Of a DNA stretch of 64,000 bases, positions 42,502 through 64,000 are shown in pieces. The stretch's first letter is position 1; every line of letters starts with the position of its first letter. The stretch covers positions 62,001 through 126,000 of IMG/VR virus record IMGVR_UViG_3300005613_000002. One strand, written 5' to 3'. A program made the translations under genes and the position numbers. A model generated the notes under the pieces. It was not told where the DNA came from. It ran no database searches and worked only from the letters and a program-made list of their open reading frames with translations.

Positions 42502-45500
42502 ATGACGAACGTTTTAGAACATAAAAGTATAATGTATATTGATGACCCAAATGGTATCAATGTAAATACTGATATAATTAATGGTATTCCACAATATCAA
42601 GATATGCATATATATGCTGAACTAACAGCAGTTAGAAAAGGTAGAAGTGTAATTACTATTGGTGATGATTTTGAAACTGATGATACTTTTAATGTTAATT
42701 TCATTGGAGTTAATCAAAATGAAGATAATCCAAATAATATGAGTTTTAGTACCAATTACTATGACGGTAGTACTGGTTCAAATGAAAAACAAATGGAATC
42801 GTTTGGTATTAGCAATATTAAAGTTACAGTTAATTCATCATACGTTCCACAAATTAATATACAATTTATTGATTTTAGAGGTTTATCATTTTTTAATCAA
42901 GAAAATTCACCATATAGAATATTATTTGATTTCCCACCACCAATATTCAACTTAAAAATTAAGGGTTATTATGGAAGAACATTAGAATATAATTTACATT
43001 TAGTTAAATATGATACTGAATTTAAATCAGATAATGGTAATTTTATTATTGATGCACAATTTGTCGCATTAACATATGCACCATTAACTGATATATTATT
43101 TAGATATATTACAAATATGCCATTGACTGTTAACAAGGAATCGTTAACTTCAAATACTAGTGATAAGCCAAAAAATACCAATGAATTAATGCTGAAAATA
43201 CAGAATTTATATTCTGAAGCAAATAAATTAATTGATAAGTCAGAAGAAAAAATAAAATATGATGAAGCATTGGTTGAATATGGTAAGATAGAATCAGCAA
43301 TTAATCTATTAGAAAATTATAAAAATATTTTAAAAGAAAAAGGCACACCAATTTTATTTCAAAAACACACAAAAGGCACATATGATTCATCTATACCAAT
43401 CCTTGATAGTGATTTTGATTTGATTGAAGGTTATCCAACAACTGTTGGTGAAATTGAAAAGTTAGAAAAAATAAAAGATTATAATTCAACAATTAAATCA
43501 CAAAAAAATTCAGTTACATCAGATAAAACAAATTCTAAATTATTTGTTGGGTATTTGGGTGCAGCAAATAATAGTAAACAAAATGAAATGTTGTTGGAAT
43601 TTAAAAATAGATTATCATCATCATCAATTGCTTTGGTTTCTGAAAATAGTATCGGAAGTCCTGAAATTATTAATGATGCATTAATACCAACATCAACAGT
43701 AACAATAAGTTCGTATTTTGTTATTGATATAACAACATTTTATGTTGAATTATATAGAAAGAAATTAGAAGTTATTGAAAAAAGGAAAAATTTATCAAAA
43801 TCAATTAATTTGATGATAAATAATTCAATTTTACAAAATCTTGGTATGATACCAACGATATATAATATATTTAAAATTATTTTAGATGATGTTGATGATT
43901 TTTTTGATATATTAAAGAAAACATCGGTTGATGCTGAAAATCATCATAATAAATTTAAATCTGAAATTATTTCTAAAATAGCACCAAACGATAATCAAAG
44001 TGGTTCTGAATATTTATATCCTTTTCCATTGATTATAAAAAATGAAGTTGGTCATTGTTTTAATAGAGAAGTAAGGACATCACCAAAAGAAATTAATGAT
44101 GTAATATCTGAACCATTTCCTGAAAGTAAATTGATAATGGAATTTATTGAAAGTTTTAATAAACAAAAACAATTTGCTATTGATTTTAAAGCGAGAACAA
44201 ACGTAAATGATGATGGTACTGCAACATGGATTCCAGTTTCACCTTTAGATTCAACATTAGGTGATGTAAGTCCTGTTTCACCATATGCTGGTAGAGTTGG
44301 AAATATCGATAATGTTCTCCAAACATTATTAGAAAGATTTTATATTCTAACACAATATTCAATTGGTAATGATTTTTATGATACTAACGATGTTAGCAAT
44401 CCAAATGCTTCTAAATATTATATTGATTTATATTCATATTCAGAAGCATTAAATATTGCATTATCTGTTAGTAATACAAATGTTTCAAATAATTTAATTG
44501 ATTTTGCTAAAAAATATTCAAAAGAAAATAGAATTCAATATTTTTATGATTATTTAGATAGTAATATAAATATTAATAACTACAGTAAACTTGATAATTA
44601 TTACGTTATTGATGGAGTTTATTATGTTGATAAAAGTAATAGTTCATATAAAGGGACAACTCTTTATCGACCTGAGATTCAACTACAAAACATACAACAA
44701 GATGATGATAATCCGCTATCAGTTTTTTTAACTGAGGTAAATAAAAAACAGAAAACAGGTTCTTGGTTTTGGAATAGGACTAAATTACCTGAATCAGCAT
44801 ATTTATTTACTAAAGAAAATGTACTTTACATTAAAGACGCACCAGTAAGTGGTGGGGAAATTGATGATAATCCAGATATCGTTTCTACTAGATTTTTAAC
44901 AAAAGCATCATTAATTGAAGATATTGGTGAATCTAATACTGGACTTCCTGATTCAATAAATAAAACATTATATGATGGATATGTAAACATATTATTAACT
45001 GAAGGTAATAGTGGTTTTAGTAAAATTCCAAATACTAATAAAAAAGTGAATATTAGTTCTAGTGATAATTTCATTGTAAATAATTTTATTAATATGATTA
45101 CTATTTGGTCTAATGAATTAGGTGTAAATGATGGTAATTTATACGATGATGTAATTAATAATTCTAGCGAATTAAGTGCAACTATTATATTATCTAATTT
45201 TGGTTTTACATTAAGTTGTTATAATTTATATCCTAAATATTTAAATGAAAGCATATTTCAAACACCAGCAGCAATTGAAGTACCTAGTTATATAGCATTA
45301 TATATTGGTTCACTAGTTAATGCAACAACTAATGGTAGATTAGATGAATTATTAAATTATTTTTCTGGTGGTAGTGGTTATAATTTAACTAGTAAAGGGT
45401 ATTATATTTTTGCCGATATTTATGACATTAATAATTATTTATCTGATGTTGATAAAACTTATTATAAAGATTTATACGATAATTGGTATTCTAATGGTTA

Positions 45501-59809: not shown

Positions 59810-60301
59810 ATGAAGATAATTGGAGAACACACACATAATTTTTCTGCATTAATGATACAATTAGGAATGCATATTGACCATTTAATAAATGGGAATCCTA
59901 TTAATGGTAGAGTCTATAATCATATATTAATTGAACATGATGGTTATGTATATGAAGCAATTGGTCATGGTGTGGTAAAATGGACATTAGCAGAACACAA
60001 TGCACAACGTAAAGTTAAAAATCATTGTAAACGAATTGAATTTAATCTCGATCTAACTAAAATTGAATTACATAAAGCATTAAGTTATTTAGAAAATCAA
60101 AAAGGTAAAAAATATGAATATGCTAATTTTTATTGGCATTTAAAAAAAATATTCACTAATAAATGGAAAGGTGATAAAACTGATAAGAAATTATATTGTA
60201 CTGAATTGGTTATCCGTGCTATGAATTTTACTGGAAAATATAATATTGACCCATATTTAAATCCAATTGAAATTAGAGAACTACTAAGAATTATTATTTA
60301 A
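59810..60301 (+). CDS. Permuted papain-like (YaeF/YiiX, NlpC/P60 superfamily) amidase
   Basis: NHILI..YEA..GV before KGKKYE and LYCTELV (His precedes Cys). Confidence 0.7.
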   Translation: MKIIGEHTHNFSALMIQLGMHIDHLINGNPINGRVYNHILIEHDGYVYEAIGHGVVKWTLAEHNAQRKVKNHCKRIEFNLDLTKIELHKALSYLENQKGKKYEYANFYWHLKKIFTNKWKGDKTDKKLYCTELVIRAMNFTGKYNIDPYLNPIEIRELLRIII

Positions 60302-60345
60302 AAATGAAAAATAATATAAATTTTTATTATTTTTTTTAAAAAGTA

Positions 60346-60375
60346 TTGTATTTATGATTTTAATGCGTATATTTG
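60346..60375 (+). promoter_or_regulatory. Host-type promoter (with overlapping late motif) for the leader/tRNA operon
   Basis: TTG-N19-TATATTTG; GTATTTAT at 60348-60355. Confidence 0.75.
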
Positions 60376-60406
60376 CATTATAATTTAGTGTTTAACAATT
60401 AGTATT

Positions 60407-60490
60407 ATGAAAAATTTAGTGAACATACAGCATCAACCCGTACAACATCCACAGGATATCGTTGAATGGGTAGATTATGTTCAAACTTAA
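60407..60490 (+). CDS. Attenuator leader peptide rich in Gln/His/Pro
   Basis: MKNLVNIQHQPVQHPQDIVEWVDYVQT*; 8 of 9 consecutive codons (60428-60454) are Q/H/P, matching the downstream tRNAs. Confidence 0.85.
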   Translation: MKNLVNIQHQPVQHPQDIVEWVDYVQT

Positions 60491-60520
60491 ATTTTTCCGA
60501 GAGAAGTTTTAATTTAGGGC

Positions 60521-60556
60521 AAAAAGTTCCATTCTATTTAGAGTGGAACTTTTTTT
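60521..60556 (+). terminator. Attenuator terminator upstream of the first tRNA
   Basis: AAAAAGTTCCATTCT-ATTT-AGAGTGGAACTTTTTTT; its 5' arm can alternatively pair with GAATGGG at 60464-60470. Confidence 0.85.
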
Positions 60557-60563
60557 GTTATAT

Positions 60564-60658
60564 CTGGGATTGAACGAGTGGTTGAAGTTACCAGCCTTGG
60601 AAACTGGTGAGGGCGATAAGATGGTTGTCCTCCGTGGGTTCGAACCCCACATCCCAGA
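60564..60658 (+). tRNA. tRNA-Pro(UGG) on a Ser-like class II scaffold
   Basis: Acceptor CTGGGAT/ATCCCAG, A73; anticodon arm CCAGC-CTTGGAA-ACTGG; 8-bp variable stem; T arm GTGGG-TTCGAAC-CCCAC. Confidence 0.8.
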
Positions 60659-60660
60659 CA

Positions 60661-60803
60661 AATGAATAATGGTAGTGTTAATATTATATATGGAGTAACT
60701 TGATGAATCCTTGAAGGAACGCTTGGTGAAAAATAGTAAAAGTATATAACAACAACACGCTAGTCGAAGATGACTGGAGTTATAGGCGAAAATCCTATTC
60801 ATT
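60661..60803 (+). ncRNA. tRNA-like structured ncRNA 1
   Basis: End pairing AATGA/TCATT; ATAATGGTA D-loop-like segment; long helix GTGTT..TTATATA/TATATAA..AACAC; hairpin CTAGTC/GACTGG; T-arm-like ATAGG-CGAAAAT-CCTAT. Confidence 0.55.
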
Positions 60804-60815
60804 GTTTATAAATAT

Positions 60816-60901
60816 GGTGATTGTTGCAGAGTGGTCAAATGCGCCAGATTGTGGTTCTGGTATCCGAAAGGATTTCGTGGGTTCGAAACCCATCATTCAC
60901 C
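60816..60901 (+). tRNA. tRNA-His(GUG) on a Tyr-like class II scaffold
   Basis: G-1:C73; anticodon arm CCAGA-TTGTGGT-TCTGG; variable arm ATCC-GAAA-GGAT. Confidence 0.85.
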
Positions 60902-60908
60902 CAAAAAT

Positions 60909-61021
60909 AATTAGTTACCCTGCTTGTTCCGTATGGGGTTATAAAAATACATCAATTAACGGAACTCATGATGGAGTCCTTGCCAAGAAAGTAGGATAAA
61001 GATGTTAGATATTAACTAATT
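60909..61021 (+). ncRNA. Structured ncRNA 2, possibly pseudoknotted
   Basis: Closing stem AATTAGTTA/TAACTAATT; GTTCCGT/ACGGAAC; TCCT/AGGA hairpin; loop ACATC can pair with GATGT. Confidence 0.5.
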
Positions 61022-61030
61022 TATAAATAT

Positions 61031-61105
61031 CGGGTAGTTATGCAGATGGCTATACAACGATGCCTTGGACGCATCGGTTCGCAGGTTCGAATCCTGCCTA
61101 TCCGA
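61031..61105 (+). tRNA. tRNA-Pro(UGG), atypical D arm, A37
   Basis: CGGGTAG/CTATCCG, A73; CGATGC-CTTGGAC-GCATCG; GCAGG-TTCGAAT-CCTGC. Confidence 0.75.
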
Positions 61106-61113
61106 CATAATAT

Positions 61114-61186
61114 AGAGTAGTAGCGCAGTTGGTAGCGTACTGCATTTGGGATGCAGGGGTCGCAGGTTCAAGTCCTGTCTACTCTA
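61114..61186 (+). tRNA. tRNA-Pro(UGG), class I, G37
   Basis: AGAGTAG/CTACTCT, A73; CTGCA-TTTGGGA-TGCAG; canonical D and T arms. Confidence 0.88.
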
Positions 61187-61188
61187 CT

Positions 61189-61260
61189 GTGTTAGTAGCA
61201 TAACTGGCTAATGCGCCACACTGTGAATGTGGAGAATAGGGTTCGAGTCCCTCTAACACC
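61189..61260 (+). tRNA. tRNA-His(GUG), class I, A37, 4-bp T stem
   Basis: GTGTTAG/CTAACAC, C73; CCACA-CTGTGAA-TGTGG; AGGG-TTCGAGT-CCCT. Confidence 0.8.
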
Positions 61261-61266
61261 CAACTT

Positions 61267-61350
61267 AGTCCTATGGTGGAATTGGTAAACACATCGTCCT
61301 TTGAAGGCGACACCCGAAAGGGTTTGTAGGTTCGAGTCCTACTAGGATTG
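61267..61350 (+). tRNA. tRNA-Gln(UUG) on a Leu-like class II scaffold
   Basis: AGTCCTA/TAGGATT, G73; D arm GTGGAATTGGTAAACAC; TCGTC-CTTTGAA-GGCGA; variable arm ACCC-GAAA-GGGT. Confidence 0.85.
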
Positions 61351-61383
61351 CAAAAGTGTGAAAAACATACTTTATTAAGACGA

Positions 61384-61471
61384 AAGAAGATTCAGAGATG
61401 GTTGACATTCATGTAACCAATAGCTCGATAATGGTAGGGTTATAGTGAAAAGTGATAATAATCTTCTTCCA
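61384..61471 (+). ncRNA. Structured ncRNA 3 ending in CCA
   Basis: Closing stem AAGAAGATT/AATCTTCTT + CCA; hairpin TGGTT-G-ACAT/ATGT-AACCA; ATAATGGTAG shared with ncRNA 1. Confidence 0.5.
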
Positions 61472-61505
61472 ATATGAAGTACAAGTATTGGATAGTCTTT
61501 TTTAT

Positions 61506-61580
61506 TGCCCATTGGTGTAATTGGCTAACACATCTGATTTTGATTCAGAAGACTTATAGGTTCGAATCCTATATGGGCAA
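61506..61580 (+). tRNA. tRNA-Gln(UUG), class I, A37
   Basis: TGCCCAT/ATGGGCA; TCTGA-TTTTGAT-TCAGA; ATAGG-TTCGAAT-CCTAT. Confidence 0.9.
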
Positions 61581-61633
61581 CTTTTCTCTTGCTACTTATT
61601 ATTTTTTTAATTATATTTATGAAAAATATAATT

Positions 61634-61831
61634 ATGGATGCAGAAGAACTATTGAAATATCTAAAAAAATGTGTTGAAGACCTAAATTTAGGTTATGAAC
61701 CAATTATAACTCCAACAAAGTCAGACCCAAGAAAATATCAAACAGATGTGTCTATTATTGTTATGGAAAAAGCATTGGTGGGTAATAGACCAATATTCAA
61801 AATAAACGTAAAAGATTTAATAAAAGGATAA
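61634..61831 (+). CDS. Hypothetical protein
   Basis: Likely start MDAEELL; first ORF after the tRNA array. Confidence 0.6.
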   Translation: MDAEELLKYLKKCVEDLNLGYEPIITPTKSDPRKYQTDVSIIVMEKALVGNRPIFKINVKDLIKG

Positions 61832-61832
61832 T

Positions 61833-62117
61833 ATGATTTACAAACTAAAACATGTTCCAACTGGTTTATATTATCAACCACATAGACATCGAGGTAGCAA
61901 TTTAAGTAAAAGAGGTAAAATTTATCAAACTTCTACTCATGGTCTATCATCAGCATTTAAAAATAAAAGAGCAACATTTACTGTTTATTGTGAAAAAGAT
62001 AGTCGCATATATAAATTATGTAATAATATTTTAAATTTCGAAGATTATAGATTTTCATATAATCAAGTAAAAGCTGAAACAAAAGTAAGTGATTGGATAA
62101 TTGAAGAAATTAAATAA
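61833..62117 (+). CDS. Hypothetical protein
   Basis: 94 aa, YKLKHVPTGLYY...LSKRGKIY. Confidence 0.65.
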   Translation: MIYKLKHVPTGLYYQPHRHRGSNLSKRGKIYQTSTHGLSSAFKNKRATFTVYCEKDSRIYKLCNNILNFEDYRFSYNQVKAETKVSDWIIEEIK

Positions 62118-62122
62118 AAACA

Positions 62123-62521
62123 ATGAAATATAATTTATTCTTAGATGATGTTAGAAACCCGATTGATTGTGTATACTACATGTATACACCAATATATACT
62201 AGTGTTGACTGGGTGATAGTTAGAGATTATAATTCTTTTATTAAAATAATTAAAGAAAATGGTTTACCTGAAATAATCTCCTTCGATCATGATTTATCTG
62301 ATGAACATTATGACCCAAAAATGTATCATGAATCATATGATGAATTATATGATTCATTTAAAGAAAAAACTGGTTACGAATGTGCTAAATGGTTGGTAGA
62401 TTATTGTATTGATAATAATGAATTTCTACCAAAAAAAATATTAGTACATTCAATGAATCCTATTGGTAGACGAAATATTGAGTCTTATTTCGAATCATAT
62501 AATAAATCATTAAAATTATAG
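62123..62521 (+). CDS. Cyclic-phosphate-processing receiver (cREC)-domain protein
   Basis: LFLDD.R.P, ISFDHDL, KTGYECAKWL and VHSMNP.G motifs. Confidence 0.75.
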   Translation: MKYNLFLDDVRNPIDCVYYMYTPIYTSVDWVIVRDYNSFIKIIKENGLPEIISFDHDLSDEHYDPKMYHESYDELYDSFKEKTGYECAKWLVDYCIDNNEFLPKKILVHSMNPIGRRNIESYFESYNKSLKL

Positions 62522-62590: not shown

Positions 62591-64000
62591 ATGAAACATA
62601 CAAGAGAAGCAATAGGAGTAACATATGATGAATTAACAACTTTAATTGGGTCTGCTAGTTTAACTGTAGGACAAACATATAAAATTACTGATTATCAAAC
62701 TGTTCATTATTTAATTGATGGTGATGGTGGTGATGTGGTTTTAGAAGGTGGAACAGGTGATACTGTCGTTCATACAGGAAATACTGAGGCATTAGTTGTA
62801 ACAGCACTTACTGGTGAAGAATTATCACCAATTGCATATAGTGAAGAATATCTATATGATATTATTCATTATGATTGGAATCCTAATAATTGGTTGTTTG
62901 ACTTAGGTTTTAGTGCTTATGATGAAGCAGTAGTAACAGGATTTAAAGGTGTTATTTATTATAGAGAAGACACACAAAATAATAATATTTTCGGATATGA
63001 TTTCCGTAATGTAATGAATCGTAGATGGGTATTGGATTATGGAGAATGGACAGGTACAACAACATATAATTTTGCTGATAAGGTTCAAGTAGAAGGTGAT
63101 GGTCTTTATATGTCAACAAAAAATAATAACACAGACAATGCAGTTAGTGCTACAACATATTGGGATAAAATTGTTGATTATTCTAATTATTCATATTGGT
63201 GTTTAAATTCTGGTGATGCACAAGATATTGAAGATTATATTGATTCATTAACATTTAATGATAGTGAAGGTTCTTATGAGGATATTGTGAAAAATAATAT
63301 ATTCACTACAAATAAAGACAATACAGACATAGGAATGAGTCCAACTAATTCTATTTTGGATAATAATGTGTTTTATTTATTAGATGATGGAGCATTTAAT
63401 TTATCAGGTAATAAGTTTGGTGTTTATTTTCAATGTAACACTATTGATGGGAATTATTTCAATAATAACTCATTAGGTAATAATTGTAGTTCAAACACTA
63501 TAAGTCGTAATTTTGAGAATAATAAAATTGAAAATTCATTTAATGGTAATTTTATTGGTTATTCTTTTGATTCTAACATTATAGGAAATTATTTTCAAAC
63601 TAACACAATTGGAAGTGGTTTTGGTAAAAATTTAATTGGGAATTATTACCAAAATAATATAATTTCTGATGGTTTCATAAGTAATATAATTGGAAATTAC
63701 TTTTCAGGAAATGATGCAATTGGAAGTGATTTTGCTGAAAACTCAATTGGTAGTGATTTTCAAAGTGTTGAAGTTGGGACTGGATTTACTAATAACACAA
63801 TAGCAAATAGTTTTAAAAGTTCTTTTACTGTTGATGATTTCCATAATAATACAATAAAAGATGATGTTACTAGCATTAATTTTGCTTCAATGACACATGC
63901 TTATGAGGATTATAATTGTGAAGTGTTTTTAACTGCTAATGATGATTATAGATTATCATATTTTAATGCAAGTGATGTGCTTACTATTGTAGCTACAACA
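62591..64000 (+). CDS. Tail fibre/spike-like beta-helix protein, runs off the window edge
   Basis: Not in the track. MKHTREAIGVTYDELTTLIGSASLTVGQTYKITDYQT..., later tandem F.xNxIG repeats; late motif at 62567. Confidence 0.7.
   Translation, partial: MKHTREAIGVTYDELTTLIGSASLTVGQTYKITDYQTVHYLIDGDGGDVVLEGGTGDTVVHTGNTEALVVTALTGEELSPIAYSEEYLYDIIHYDWNPNNWLFDLGFSAYDEAVVTGFKGVIYYREDTQNNNIFGYDFRNVMNRRWVLDYGEWTGTTTYNFADKVQVEGDGLYMSTKNNNTDNAVSATTYWDKIVDYSNYSYWCLNSGDAQDIEDYIDSLTFNDSEGSYEDIVKNNIFTTNKDNTDIGMSPTNSILDNNVFYLLDDGAFNLSGNKFGVYFQCNTIDGNYFNNNSLGNNCSSNTISRNFENNKIENSFNGNFIGYSFDSNIIGNYFQTNTIGSGFGKNLIGNYYQNNIISDGFISNIIGNYFSGNDAIGSDFAENSIGSDFQSVEVGTGFTNNTIANSFKSSFTVDDFHNNTIKDDVTSINFASMTHAYEDYNCEVFLTANDDYRLSYFNASDVLTIVATT

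What the first reader, a model, noticed from the sequence alone, without database searches (positions are those of the whole stretch)
60661..60803. About 140-nt tRNA-mimic ncRNA between the first two tRNAs
Seen: short end-to-end stem, unpaired ATAATGGTA D-loop-like segment, long interrupted helix, extra hairpin and a T-arm-like ATAGG-CGAAAAT-CCTAT. The layout recalls the tRNA-like domain of tmRNA without a tag region; T4 also carries stable non-tRNA species in its tRNA cluster. Inference: a decoy for tRNA-targeting enzymes.
Basis: partly seen in the sequence, partly recalled or inferred. Interest (0 to 1): 0.6.

Follow-up and report, generated by a model that had tools for sequence, protein, structure and literature searches.

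The report
tRNA-shaped non-decoding RNA in phage tRNA operon
Between two tRNA genes of a 322-kb phage lies a 141-base unit that folds into a complete tRNA cloverleaf but cannot read codons, an independent look-alike of phage T4's 'species 1' RNA; whether it is used or is a dead tRNA gene is open.

Summary
Window 60666-60806 (+) is a full cloverleaf with the tRNA connector lengths 2/1/4/0: a 7-bp acceptor helix, U8-A9, a 5-bp stem in the D position that encloses a 74-nt insertion, G26, a 6-bp hairpin with a 6-nt loop in the anticodon position, a 4-nt variable loop, and a 5-bp/7-nt T-like arm.

- **Not chance:** a strict descriptor finds this shape 14 times in the 321.6-kb genome, 13 of them called tRNAs plus this unit. 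It appears in 1 of 20,000 shuffles.
- **Likely origin:** only the array's tRNA-Gln(UUG) shares both its D and T stems, so it probably derives from a tRNA.
- **Cannot decode:** it lacks U33, a 7-nt anticodon loop, the UUC of the T loop and G18-G19.
- **No family or relative found:** there is no Rfam hit. A model of T4 rnaC, which has the same layout, does not match it. No homologue turned up in more than 20 related arrays or 342 kb of relatives, so covariation is untestable. No RNA run was listed.

Best reading (0.45): a tRNA-shaped RNA kept for its fold and cut from the operon transcript. Main rival (0.38): a dead tRNA gene. The decoy role is untested.

More striking nearby: a conserved leader-peptide attenuator appears to gate the Pro/His/Gln tRNA operon.

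The parts
60666..60672 (+). 5' strand of the acceptor-like helix (AUAAUGG). The predicted RNase P site is between 60665 and 60666.
   Evidence: Pairs 7/7 with 60799-60805 (5 Watson-Crick pairs, 2 G-U). The central pair has probability 0.95.
60673..60674 (+). Two-base connector U-A, in the place of tRNA U8-A9.
   Evidence: Read from the sequence; this connector length is required by the descriptor that hits only tRNAs and this unit.
60675..60758 (+). Expanded arm in the D position. The stem GUGUU (60675-60679) pairs with AACAC (60754-60758). Inside it lie a 4x4 internal loop, an 8-bp inner helix (60684-60691 with 60742-60749) and a 50-nt apical loop (60692-60741).
   Evidence: Minimum-free-energy fold and pair probabilities of 0.85. 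The stem GUGU/ACAC is the D stem of tRNA-Gln(UUG) at 61506-61581, the only one of 46 tRNAs that shares it.
60759..60759 (+). One-base connector G, in the place of tRNA position 26.
60760..60777 (+). Hairpin in the anticodon-arm position: CUAGUC-GAAGAU-GACUGG. It reads as 6 bp with a 6-nt loop, or 5 bp with an 8-nt loop. There is no U33 and no 7-nt loop.
   Evidence: Pair probability 0.997. The loop was read from the sequence.
60778..60781 (+). Four-base variable loop AGUU.
60782..60798 (+). T-like arm AUAGG-CGAAAAU-CCUAU. The stem and the bases before it equal those of tRNA-Gln(UUG). The loop lacks U54-U55-C56.
   Evidence: Repeat D7, 17 of 22 identical to 61551-61572. It is the only tRNA with the same T stem. 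Pair probability 0.94.
60799..60806 (+). 3' strand of the acceptor-like helix (UCAUUGU) plus discriminator-position U60806. No CCA is encoded, as in the neighbouring tRNAs.
60564..60659 (+). Upstream neighbour: tRNA-Pro(UGG), 96 nt, with a long variable arm.
   Evidence: ARAGORN and Rfam. Conserved in 24 related contigs.
60816..60902 (+). Downstream neighbour: tRNA-His(GUG), 86 nt, with a long variable arm and encoded G-1 at 60816.
   Evidence: G-1 read from the sequence.
60340..60560 (+). Probable control region of the transcript that carries the unit. It holds a promoter-like box with TAnnTTTG (about 60368-60376). The leader ORF (60407-60490) has a Gln/His/Pro codon run at 60428-60454. The antiterminator strand is GAAUGGG (60464-60470). 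The terminator hairpin (60521-60554) has its T run ending at about 60556.

Best explanation
Window 60666-60806 (+) is a tRNA-derived, non-decoding, tRNA-shaped RNA unit of the Pro/His/Gln tRNA operon.

**Shown:**
- It is a complete cloverleaf with tRNA connector lengths and 31 intact base pairs.
- It has a 74-nt insertion that turns the D loop into a long arm.
- Its D and T stems are the same as those of the operon's tRNA-Gln(UUG).
- Its loops rule out decoding.

**Inferred:**
- It is transcribed with the seven tRNAs from the promoter near 60340-60377, behind the leader-peptide attenuator.
- It is released by the tRNA-processing enzymes. RNase P would cut at 60665/60666, and the 3' end would be trimmed near 60806, because the 12-bp acceptor/T stack is intact.
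- The RNA of about 141 nt is kept for its shape. It would be a tRNA-like ligand that binds or titrates a tRNA-recognising protein of host or phage.

This makes it a functional analogue, not a homologue, of phage T4 species 1 RNA (rnaC). Which protein it meets is unknown. A decoy role against tRNA-targeting nucleases is one possibility among several.
For: - **Specificity of the cloverleaf:** 14 hits in the genome, 13 called tRNAs plus this unit; 1 of 20,000 shuffles; about one long false hit per Mb overall.
- **Fold:** the cloverleaf is the minimum-free-energy structure, with helix probabilities of 0.85-0.997.
- **Gene-like spacing:** the gaps to the neighbouring tRNAs are 7 and 10 nt, like the 1-7 nt between other tRNAs of the array.
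- **Paralogy:** only tRNA-Gln(UUG) 61506-61581 has both the same D stem and the same T stem.
- **Paired stems despite divergence:** the acceptor and anticodon-position stems resemble none of 364 distinct tRNAs of this phage group, yet every pair is formed. This is what selection on the fold would give.
- **Precedent:** T4 rnaC is 139 nt and lies in a tRNA cluster. It has a terminal helix stacked on the T arm, a long arm in the D position and a hairpin with a 6-nt loop. Nineteen of its 46 pairs covary among Tevenvirinae. It accumulates, and its role is unknown (PMC3014915, PMC9697503).
- **Same genome:** it holds other long tRNA-like genes with canonical T arms.
- **Single transcription unit:** promoter-like box, leader ORF and the only terminator-like hairpins lie upstream of 60564, and none lies inside the array.
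Against: - No homologue was found by blastn, nhmmer or a covariance model of the unit in the genome or in relatives. The best non-self model hit lies inside a coding frame.
- In more than 20 related arrays the same position holds only 4-76 nt.
- The only second copy is identical, so there is no covariation evidence at all.
- No RNA data were available.
- The fold energy is not better than shuffles.
- GC content is 33%, against about 39-65% for the neighbouring tRNAs.
- The T loop CGAAAAU lacks U54-U55-C56 and there is no G18-G19. A tRNA elbow is therefore doubtful, and with it efficient recognition by RNase P and other tRNA enzymes.
- The argument from intact stems assumes an old origin, which is not shown.
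Confidence: 0.45

Rival explanations
1. It is a dead tRNA gene. A former tRNA of the array, perhaps a tRNA-Gln copy, was disabled by an insertion of about 65-75 nt in its D loop and by changes in the anticodon and T loops. It is transcribed as part of the precursor and degraded as a by-product, and has no function of its own.
For: - It is lineage-specific: absent at this position in more than 20 related arrays, and no homologue was found anywhere.
- Every loop needed for decoding and for the tRNA elbow is spoiled.
- It has low GC and ordinary fold energy.
- These arrays are in flux. Homing-endonuclease genes and their remnants sit between tRNAs in relatives, and partial tRNAs occur.
Against: - All 31 pairs are intact, while the acceptor and anticodon-position stems share nothing with any sampled tRNA. 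Neutral decay that erased the sequence should also have broken pairs.
- The inserted segment extends the D stem as a helix rather than being random.
Confidence: 0.38
2. It is a true member, by descent, of the T4 species 1 RNA (rnaC) family.
For: It has the same place (inside a tRNA cluster, between two tRNAs in Klebsiella phage KaAlpha), the same size and the same order of elements.
Against: - A covariance model of five Tevenvirinae rnaC sequences finds real tRNAs of the window weakly. The best is 16 bits at 61030-61106. It gives no match on 60661-60806 at E up to 10 with filters off.
- None of the conserved rnaC sequence blocks is present.
- The connector lengths differ.
- The T loop is canonical in rnaC and not here.
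Confidence: 0.03
3. It is a working tRNA whose insertion is removed, or tolerated, after transcription.
For: The phage has other tRNA-like genes with large insertions that keep canonical anticodon and T loops.
Against: - Even without the insertion the unit has no 7-nt anticodon loop, no U33 and no U54-U55-C56.
- No small intron of this kind is known in a bacterial or phage tRNA D loop (own knowledge).
- There is no tRNA hit in Rfam at E up to 10.
Confidence: 0.04
4. It is a chance fold of an AT-rich spacer, or a plain processing spacer.
For: - The fold energy is not unusual.
- The simple acceptor plus hairpin module is common in this genome.
- The spacers at this position in relatives have only weak structure.
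Against: The full cloverleaf is found in 1 of 20,000 shuffles and nowhere else in the genome outside tRNAs. It also shares its D and T stems with tRNA-Gln.
Confidence: 0.04
5. It is a protein-coding or other known RNA element: small ORFs, the antisense 97-codon frame 60509-60802, a Y RNA-like RNA, or a tmRNA-like domain.
For: ORFs of 13 codons exist at 60662-60703 and 60770-60811, and an antisense frame is open.
Against: - The antisense frame runs through tRNA-Pro, and its product is low-complexity.
- blastx of the spacer finds only itself.
- There is no YrlA or tmRNA match on the unit.
- The genome has no TROVE or RtcB gene.
- The tmRNA lies elsewhere.
Confidence: 0.02

Closest known systems
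Phage T4 species 1 RNA (rnaC, NC_000866 70908-71046) and its Tevenvirinae relatives
   Same: - It lies in the sense strand of a phage tRNA cluster. In Klebsiella phage KaAlpha it sits directly between two tRNAs.
- It is about 140 nt long.
- The terminal 7-bp helix stacks on a 5-bp/7-nt T arm.
- A long arm of 60-85 nt occupies the D position.
- A hairpin with a 6-nt loop sits where the anticodon arm would be, so it is non-decoding.
- Its biological role is unknown (PMC3014915, PMC9697503).
   Different: - There is no sequence similarity, and the rnaC covariance model gives no hit.
- rnaC has a canonical GGUUCGAAUCC T arm, GC-rich helices and z = -4.6, with 19 covarying pairs. The unit here has the T loop CGAAAAU, 33% GC, z about -0.3 to -1.3 and no relatives.
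- Connectors are 0/9/1/0 in rnaC against the tRNA-like 2/1/4/0 here.
- The host lineage is unrelated. This phage has Bacteroidota-type promoter boxes, which is an inference.
Canonical tRNA (Rfam RF00005), in particular the operon's own tRNA-Gln(UUG) at 61506-61581
   Same: - Cloverleaf with connectors 2/1/4/0.
- U8-A9, and the G53-C61 closing pair of the T arm.
- D stem GUGU/ACAC and T stem AUAGG/CCUAU identical to tRNA-Gln(UUG).
   Different: - A 74-nt insertion replaces the D loop.
- The anticodon-position loop has 6 or 8 nt and no U33.
- The T loop lacks U54-U55-C56.
- The acceptor stem is all different, with one G-C pair only.
- Rfam and ARAGORN give no call.
tRNA-like domain of tmRNA
   Same: An acceptor/T-arm stack without a decoding anticodon.
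   Different: - There is no G3-U70, no tag frame and no pseudoknots, and ARAGORN and Rfam give no call.
- The phage has a separate 361-nt tmRNA at G000 132007-132367.
Bacterial Y RNA-like YrlA (RF02553) with Rsr/Ro60
   Same: A non-coding RNA with a tRNA-like module, in a setting of RNA repair genes. A cREC protein lies at 62123-62521 and an Rnl1-type ligase about 13 kb further on.
   Different: - In YrlA the RNA ends lie in the Ro-binding stem, not in the acceptor helix.
- There is no RF02553 match on the unit.
- The genome has no TROVE/Rsr gene and no RtcB.

Membership tests
tRNA (decoding, RF00005) | Four-arm cloverleaf with connectors of 2, 1, 4-5 and 0 bases | tested here: met
   Strict descriptor and minimum-free-energy fold.
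tRNA (decoding, RF00005) | Seven-base anticodon loop with U33 and purine 37 | tested here: not met
   The loop is GAAGAU (6 nt) or CGAAGAUG (8 nt), and position 33 is not U.
tRNA (decoding, RF00005) | T loop U54-U55-C56-R57-A58, and D loop with G18-G19 | tested here: not met
   The T loop is CGAAAAU, and the D loop is replaced by a 74-nt helix and loop.
tRNA (decoding, RF00005) | Score at or above the Rfam gathering threshold, or an ARAGORN call | tested here: not met
   No match at gathering or at E up to 10, and ARAGORN finds nothing.
T4 species 1 RNA (rnaC) | Gene inside a phage tRNA cluster, same strand, about 140 nt | tested here: met
T4 species 1 RNA (rnaC) | Layout: terminal helix stacked on the T arm, long arm in the D position, hairpin with a 6-nt loop | tested here: met
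   Compare. The connector lengths differ.
T4 species 1 RNA (rnaC) | Match to a covariance model of the family (conserved blocks plus structure) | tested here: not met
   Model R1, built from 5 Tevenvirinae sequences, gives no match on 60661-60806 at E up to 10 with filters off.
T4 species 1 RNA (rnaC) | Accumulates as a stable processed RNA | not testable with these tools
   No sequencing run was listed for this stretch.
tmRNA tRNA-like domain | G3-U70 alanine identity pair, tag reading frame, detection by ARAGORN or Rfam | tested here: not met
   Position 3-70 is A-U. There is no call on the unit, and the tmRNA lies elsewhere.
Y RNA-like (YrlA) with Rsr | RF02553 match and an Rsr/TROVE partner gene | tested here: not met
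   The only weak YrlA match lies on a real tRNA at 61079-61138. The genome has no PF05731.
tRNA pseudogene | Recognisable parent tRNA | tested here: inconclusive
   The D and T stems equal tRNA-Gln(UUG), but the acceptor and anticodon stems match none of 364 tRNAs.
tRNA pseudogene | Uncompensated decay of the stems | tested here: not met
   All 31 pairs are standard pairs.

The most novel reading that the evidence does not exclude
The unit is a working decoy made from a tRNA-Gln copy. It is expressed only when the leader-peptide attenuator senses a shortage of charged Pro, His or Gln tRNA. Its 50-nt apical loop displays anticodon-loop words of the operon's own tRNAs (UUGAU, UUGAA, CUUGG, GUGAA) on a tRNA-shaped body. 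In this way it would soak up a host anticodon nuclease or another tRNA-targeting factor that attacks exactly these tRNAs. It would also be a second, independent invention of the T4 species 1 RNA design, and so a handle on the unexplained role of that RNA.
Probability: 0.12. Interest if true: 0.8.

Novelty: new variant of a known kind. Interest (0 to 1): 0.45.

Why it matters
Phage T4's species 1 and 2 RNAs were sequenced in the 1970s (own knowledge). They are still without a known role (PMC3014915, PMC9697503).

An unrelated jumbo phage has built the same design independently: a tRNA body, an expanded D-position arm and a non-decoding hairpin. It sits inside a tRNA operon beside RNA-repair genes. 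This suggests that such tRNA-shaped RNAs are a recurrent solution, and it gives a second system in which to ask what they bind.

If instead it is a dead gene, it shows how fast these arrays turn over.

The surroundings matter more. The operon appears to be switched on by ribosome stalling at Pro, His and Gln codons. That would tie phage tRNA supply to tRNA depletion in the host.

Tried and rejected
- **Rfam:** gathering thresholds on the whole window and E up to 10 on 60300-62000 gave nothing on the unit.
- **Paralogues in the genome:** blastn-short found none.
- **Exact and gapped word scans:** viral contigs gave no hit. A gapped scan of genome contigs gave 6 hits in unrelated bacteria, about the number expected by chance (my estimate is about 8), and I did not follow them.
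- **Relatives through neighbouring proteins:**
  - The 163-aa protein has no relative in viral contigs.
  - The 473-aa protein is a fibre-like, shuffled protein whose homologues are not syntenic.
- **Relatives through conserved tRNA words:** this worked, but none carries the unit except L052, which is identical.
- **Sequence searches on relatives:** BLAST of 60400-61000 against five related full records matched the leader and the tRNAs but not the unit. nhmmer found nothing.
- **Homing-endonuclease remnant:** rejected, because blastx of the three spacers against all frames of all loci finds only itself.
- **Homology with the 53-76-nt spacers of relatives:** rejected, with local alignment p of 0.3-0.98. 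Those spacers have little structure.
- **Mobile element with terminal inverted repeats:** rejected, because there is no second copy.
- **Covariance model of the unit on 342 kb of relatives:** the best non-self hit (22.5 bits, E about 0.014) lies inside a coding frame.
- **Global alignment of the unit without its insertion to 364 tRNAs:** no near relative.
- **Sequencing runs:** none was listed.
- **Not needed:** no other genetic code was used, and no structure or complex prediction was needed.

Full report
**Setting**

The window is bases 62001-126000 of a 321,624-bp virus record with direct terminal repeats. It is a jumbo phage of about 27% GC. ARAGORN finds 46 tRNA genes in the genome, most amino acids twice, plus a tmRNA and a tRNA with anticodon CUA.

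The finding lies in the first array, whose units are:
- tRNA-Pro(UGG), 96 nt, 60564-60659
- the 157-nt spacer with the candidate
- tRNA-His(GUG), 86 nt, 60817-60902
- a 128-nt spacer
- tRNA-Pro, tRNA-Pro and tRNA-His
- tRNA-Gln(UUG), 85 nt
- a 154-nt spacer
- tRNA-Gln(UUG), 61506-61581

The weak DNA similarity of the tRNAs to Bacteroides crAss-like phages, and promoter-like boxes of the TAnnTTTG type, suggest a Bacteroidota host. This is an inference.

**The observation**

Simple measures did not single the candidate out:
- The fold energy is no better than shuffles: z = -0.34 for 60660-60806 and -1.26 for the full spacer.
- Rfam has no match even at E = 10.
- A two-element module, a perfect 5-bp/7-nt hairpin followed by a 7-base strand that pairs 100-170 nt upstream, occurs about 0.26 times per kb per strand in this AT-rich genome. 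One is expected among all inter-tRNA spacers.

The decisive point is the geometry. For 60666-60806 the minimum-free-energy structure is a four-arm cloverleaf whose connectors are 2, 1, 4 and 0 bases, as in tRNA:
- acceptor AUAAUGG/UCAUUGU
- U-A
- stem GUGUU/AACAC
- G
- hairpin CUAGUC-GAAGAU-GACUGG
- AGUU
- AUAGG-CGAAAAU-CCUAU, followed directly by the 3' acceptor strand

Helix probabilities in the ensemble are 0.85-0.997.

A strict descriptor of this geometry allowed a D loop of 7-90 nt and an anticodon loop of 6-8 nt.
- It hits 14 places in the whole genome on both strands: 13 called tRNAs and this unit.
- Only 1 of 20,000 dinucleotide shuffles of the spacer meets it.
- In about 197 kb of tRNA-rich DNA from relatives it gave one long false hit, a terminator at the end of a gene.
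- None of the 16 other inter-tRNA spacers tested gives a cloverleaf without a mismatch. Two give hits when one mismatch is allowed.

With the unit bounded at 60666-60806, the gaps to the neighbouring tRNAs are 7 and 10 nt, like ordinary gaps in this array.

Two assignments change. The 'ATAATGGTA D-loop-like' stretch is the 5' acceptor strand plus U8-A9. The long helix and the extra hairpin stand in the D-arm and anticodon-arm positions.

**What it is**

Of the 46 tRNAs of the genome, only tRNA-Gln(UUG) at 61506-61581 has the same T stem (AUAGG/CCUAU, with the same bases before it). The same gene alone has the same D stem (GUGU/ACAC). The unit is therefore most simply a derivative of a tRNA, probably of a tRNA-Gln copy.

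It cannot decode:
- The anticodon-position loop has 6 or 8 bases and no U33.
- The T loop CGAAAAU lacks U54-U55-C56.
- The D loop, with its G18-G19, is replaced by 74 nt that prolong the D stem: an internal loop, an 8-bp helix and a 50-nt loop.

The acceptor and anticodon-position stems resemble none of 364 distinct tRNAs collected from this phage group. Yet all 31 pairs are standard pairs.

**Relatives**

I found the phage group through conserved tRNA words: 14 viral contigs with the long-arm tRNA-Gln, and 6 viral plus 19 metagenome contigs with the 96-nt tRNA-Pro.

- The order Pro, His, Pro, His, Gln is kept. After the 96-nt tRNA-Pro the relatives have only 4-76 nt before the next tRNA.
- One contig, L052, has the unit but is identical over 1.5 kb.
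- No relative of the unit was found by BLAST of 60400-61000 against five full related records, by nhmmer, by local alignment to the relatives' spacers, or by a covariance model built from the unit and run over 342 kb.
- The three spacers carry no protein remnant.
- No sequencing run was listed.

**Comparison with the known**

T4 rnaC (species 1 RNA) is 139 nt and sits in the T4 tRNA cluster. It folds into a terminal 7-bp helix stacked on a canonical T arm, a long arm in the D position and a hairpin with a 6-nt loop, with z = -4.6. Five Tevenvirinae sequences support this fold, with 19 covarying pairs of 46. In Klebsiella phage KaAlpha it lies between two tRNAs. It is not in Rfam. Its role is still unknown (PMC3014915, PMC9697503).

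The layout is the same as here. Membership fails, however. A covariance model of rnaC picks up real tRNAs of the window weakly but not the unit. The conserved blocks are absent and the connectors differ.

The tmRNA-domain and Y-RNA readings fail on their defining features.

**How it most likely works**

*Shown:* the fold, its specificity, the tRNA-Gln stems and the inability to decode.

*Inferred:* the unit is part of one transcript that starts at a promoter-like box near 60340-60377. The only terminator-like hairpin near the array precedes the first tRNA. The intact 12-bp acceptor/T stack would let RNase P and the 3' trimming enzymes release an RNA of about 141 nt.

From there two readings are close.
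- I give 0.45 to an RNA kept for its shape, an analogue of T4 species 1 RNA that binds a tRNA-recognising protein. The reasons are that every pair is intact in stems that have otherwise diverged beyond recognition, the insertion is itself helical, and the design has a conserved precedent.
- I give 0.38 to a dead tRNA gene. The reasons are that the unit is confined to one lineage, all functional loops are spoiled, its GC is low, and these arrays are visibly in flux. Homing-endonuclease genes and fragments lie between tRNAs in relatives.

The decoy idea has no direct support. The 50-nt loop holds four 5-base words of the operon's own anticodon loops against about one expected (p about 0.03-0.05), but I looked for this after the fact.

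**Surroundings**

The operon is preceded by a 27-codon ORF (60407-60490) whose codons 8-16 read Q-H-Q-P-V-Q-H-P-Q. These are the three amino acids of all seven tRNAs that follow. A strong terminator (60521-60554) comes after it.

- At least eleven related contigs keep the ORF (MKNL.NI..PQPQQHPQ..EWGNYA) and the terminator.
- The codons GAA-UGG-G(G) inside the ORF are complementary to the 5' arm of the terminator (CCCCAUUC).
- In L043 both sides change together (GAACGGGG with CCCCGUUC) although the peptide changes.
- Two more arrays of this genome have the same build. Their leader peptides are rich in the amino acids of their own downstream tRNAs (L, A, V, D, E, W; and N, I, S, T, G, F, C, R). 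Both have ORF-embedded strands complementary to their terminators.

This looks like classical leader-peptide attenuation applied to tRNA genes. Two library searches found no description of it.

**Verdict**

The feature is real and tRNA-shaped. It is a new variant of the kind exemplified by T4 species 1 RNA, and its function is not shown. Interest is moderate for the unit itself and higher for the attenuator beside it.

Noticed in passing
window 60340-60560 (+); also L002:8635-8862 and G000:C1:146525-146753: This looks like a leader-peptide attenuator in front of tRNA operons.
- The ORF 60407-60490 (MKNLVNIQHQPVQHPQDIVEWVDYVQT) is rich in Gln, His and Pro. It is followed by the terminator 60521-60554 and then by seven Pro, His and Gln tRNAs.
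- It is conserved in at least 11 related contigs.
- The strand GAAUGGG(G) inside the ORF pairs with the terminator arm (C)CCCAUUC and covaries in L043.
- Two other arrays of the genome have leaders rich in their own downstream amino acids, with the same build.
- Two library searches found no description of it.
   Followed up: partly
window 60564-60659, 60817-60902, 61267-61351: tRNAs for Pro(UGG), His(GUG) and Gln(UUG) carry long variable arms (96, 86 and 85 nt). Each stands beside a normal-length tRNA with the same anticodon. Elsewhere in the genome Asn, Cys, Trp and Met also have long forms. The 96-nt tRNA-Pro is conserved in 24 related contigs. Long arms are otherwise the mark of Leu, Ser and Tyr tRNAs.
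   Followed up: partly
L002:11505-11585, L002:19366-19450, G000:C1:148144-148271, G000:C1:43468-43602 (-) and a T arm at 43282-43298 (-): These are tRNA-like genes with canonical T arms that ARAGORN does not call:
- a tRNA-Leu(UAG)-like gene with an odd D arm
- a tRNA with a 20-nt anticodon loop
- a 127-nt tRNA-like gene with a 55-nt variable arm
- a 134-nt one with a large insertion after the acceptor stem
- a paralogue that ends in an encoded CCA
   Followed up: partly
window 61352-61505: The spacer before the last tRNA-Gln folds much better than shuffles (z about -3). It shares the 15-mer ATAATGGTAG[G/T]GTTA with the candidate. It ends in a hairpin followed by a T run, which could be an internal terminator or a second control point.
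   Followed up: no
G000:C1:127130-127360, 147528-147845, 151304-151575, 129827-129983: Other inter-tRNA spacers have strongly non-random fold energy, with z from -3.4 to -7.5. I did not examine their content.
   Followed up: no
window 62123-62521; L002:17768-18856: A cREC (cyclic-phosphate processing receiver, PF20274) protein lies directly after the array. An Rnl1-type RNA ligase lies about 13 kb downstream. The genome has no RtcB and no TROVE gene. This fits a tRNA damage-and-repair theme.
   Followed up: partly
L002:11984-12057, G000:C1:151233-151303, G000:C1:159544-159617: ARAGORN calls two tRNAs with a 6-nt and an 8-nt anticodon loop (anticodon given as 'ta' and 'cgaa'). It also calls a tRNA with anticodon CUA, an amber-suppressor type. 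I did not test whether the phage reads TAG as sense.
   Followed up: no
L018:11460-12050 (-), L014:2569-2708, L007 (reverse strand) 1-868: In relatives, HNH-type homing-endonuclease genes, or what look like fragments of them, sit between tRNA genes of the same array. This shows rapid turnover of the spacers.
   Followed up: no
window 62591-64000 (continues to L002:8012): This 473-aa protein has no Pfam match. It has a 58% identical paralogue in the same genome. Its homologues lie next to tail and fibre genes in unrelated phages, so it is probably a fibre or receptor-binding protein placed between tRNA arrays.
   Followed up: partly
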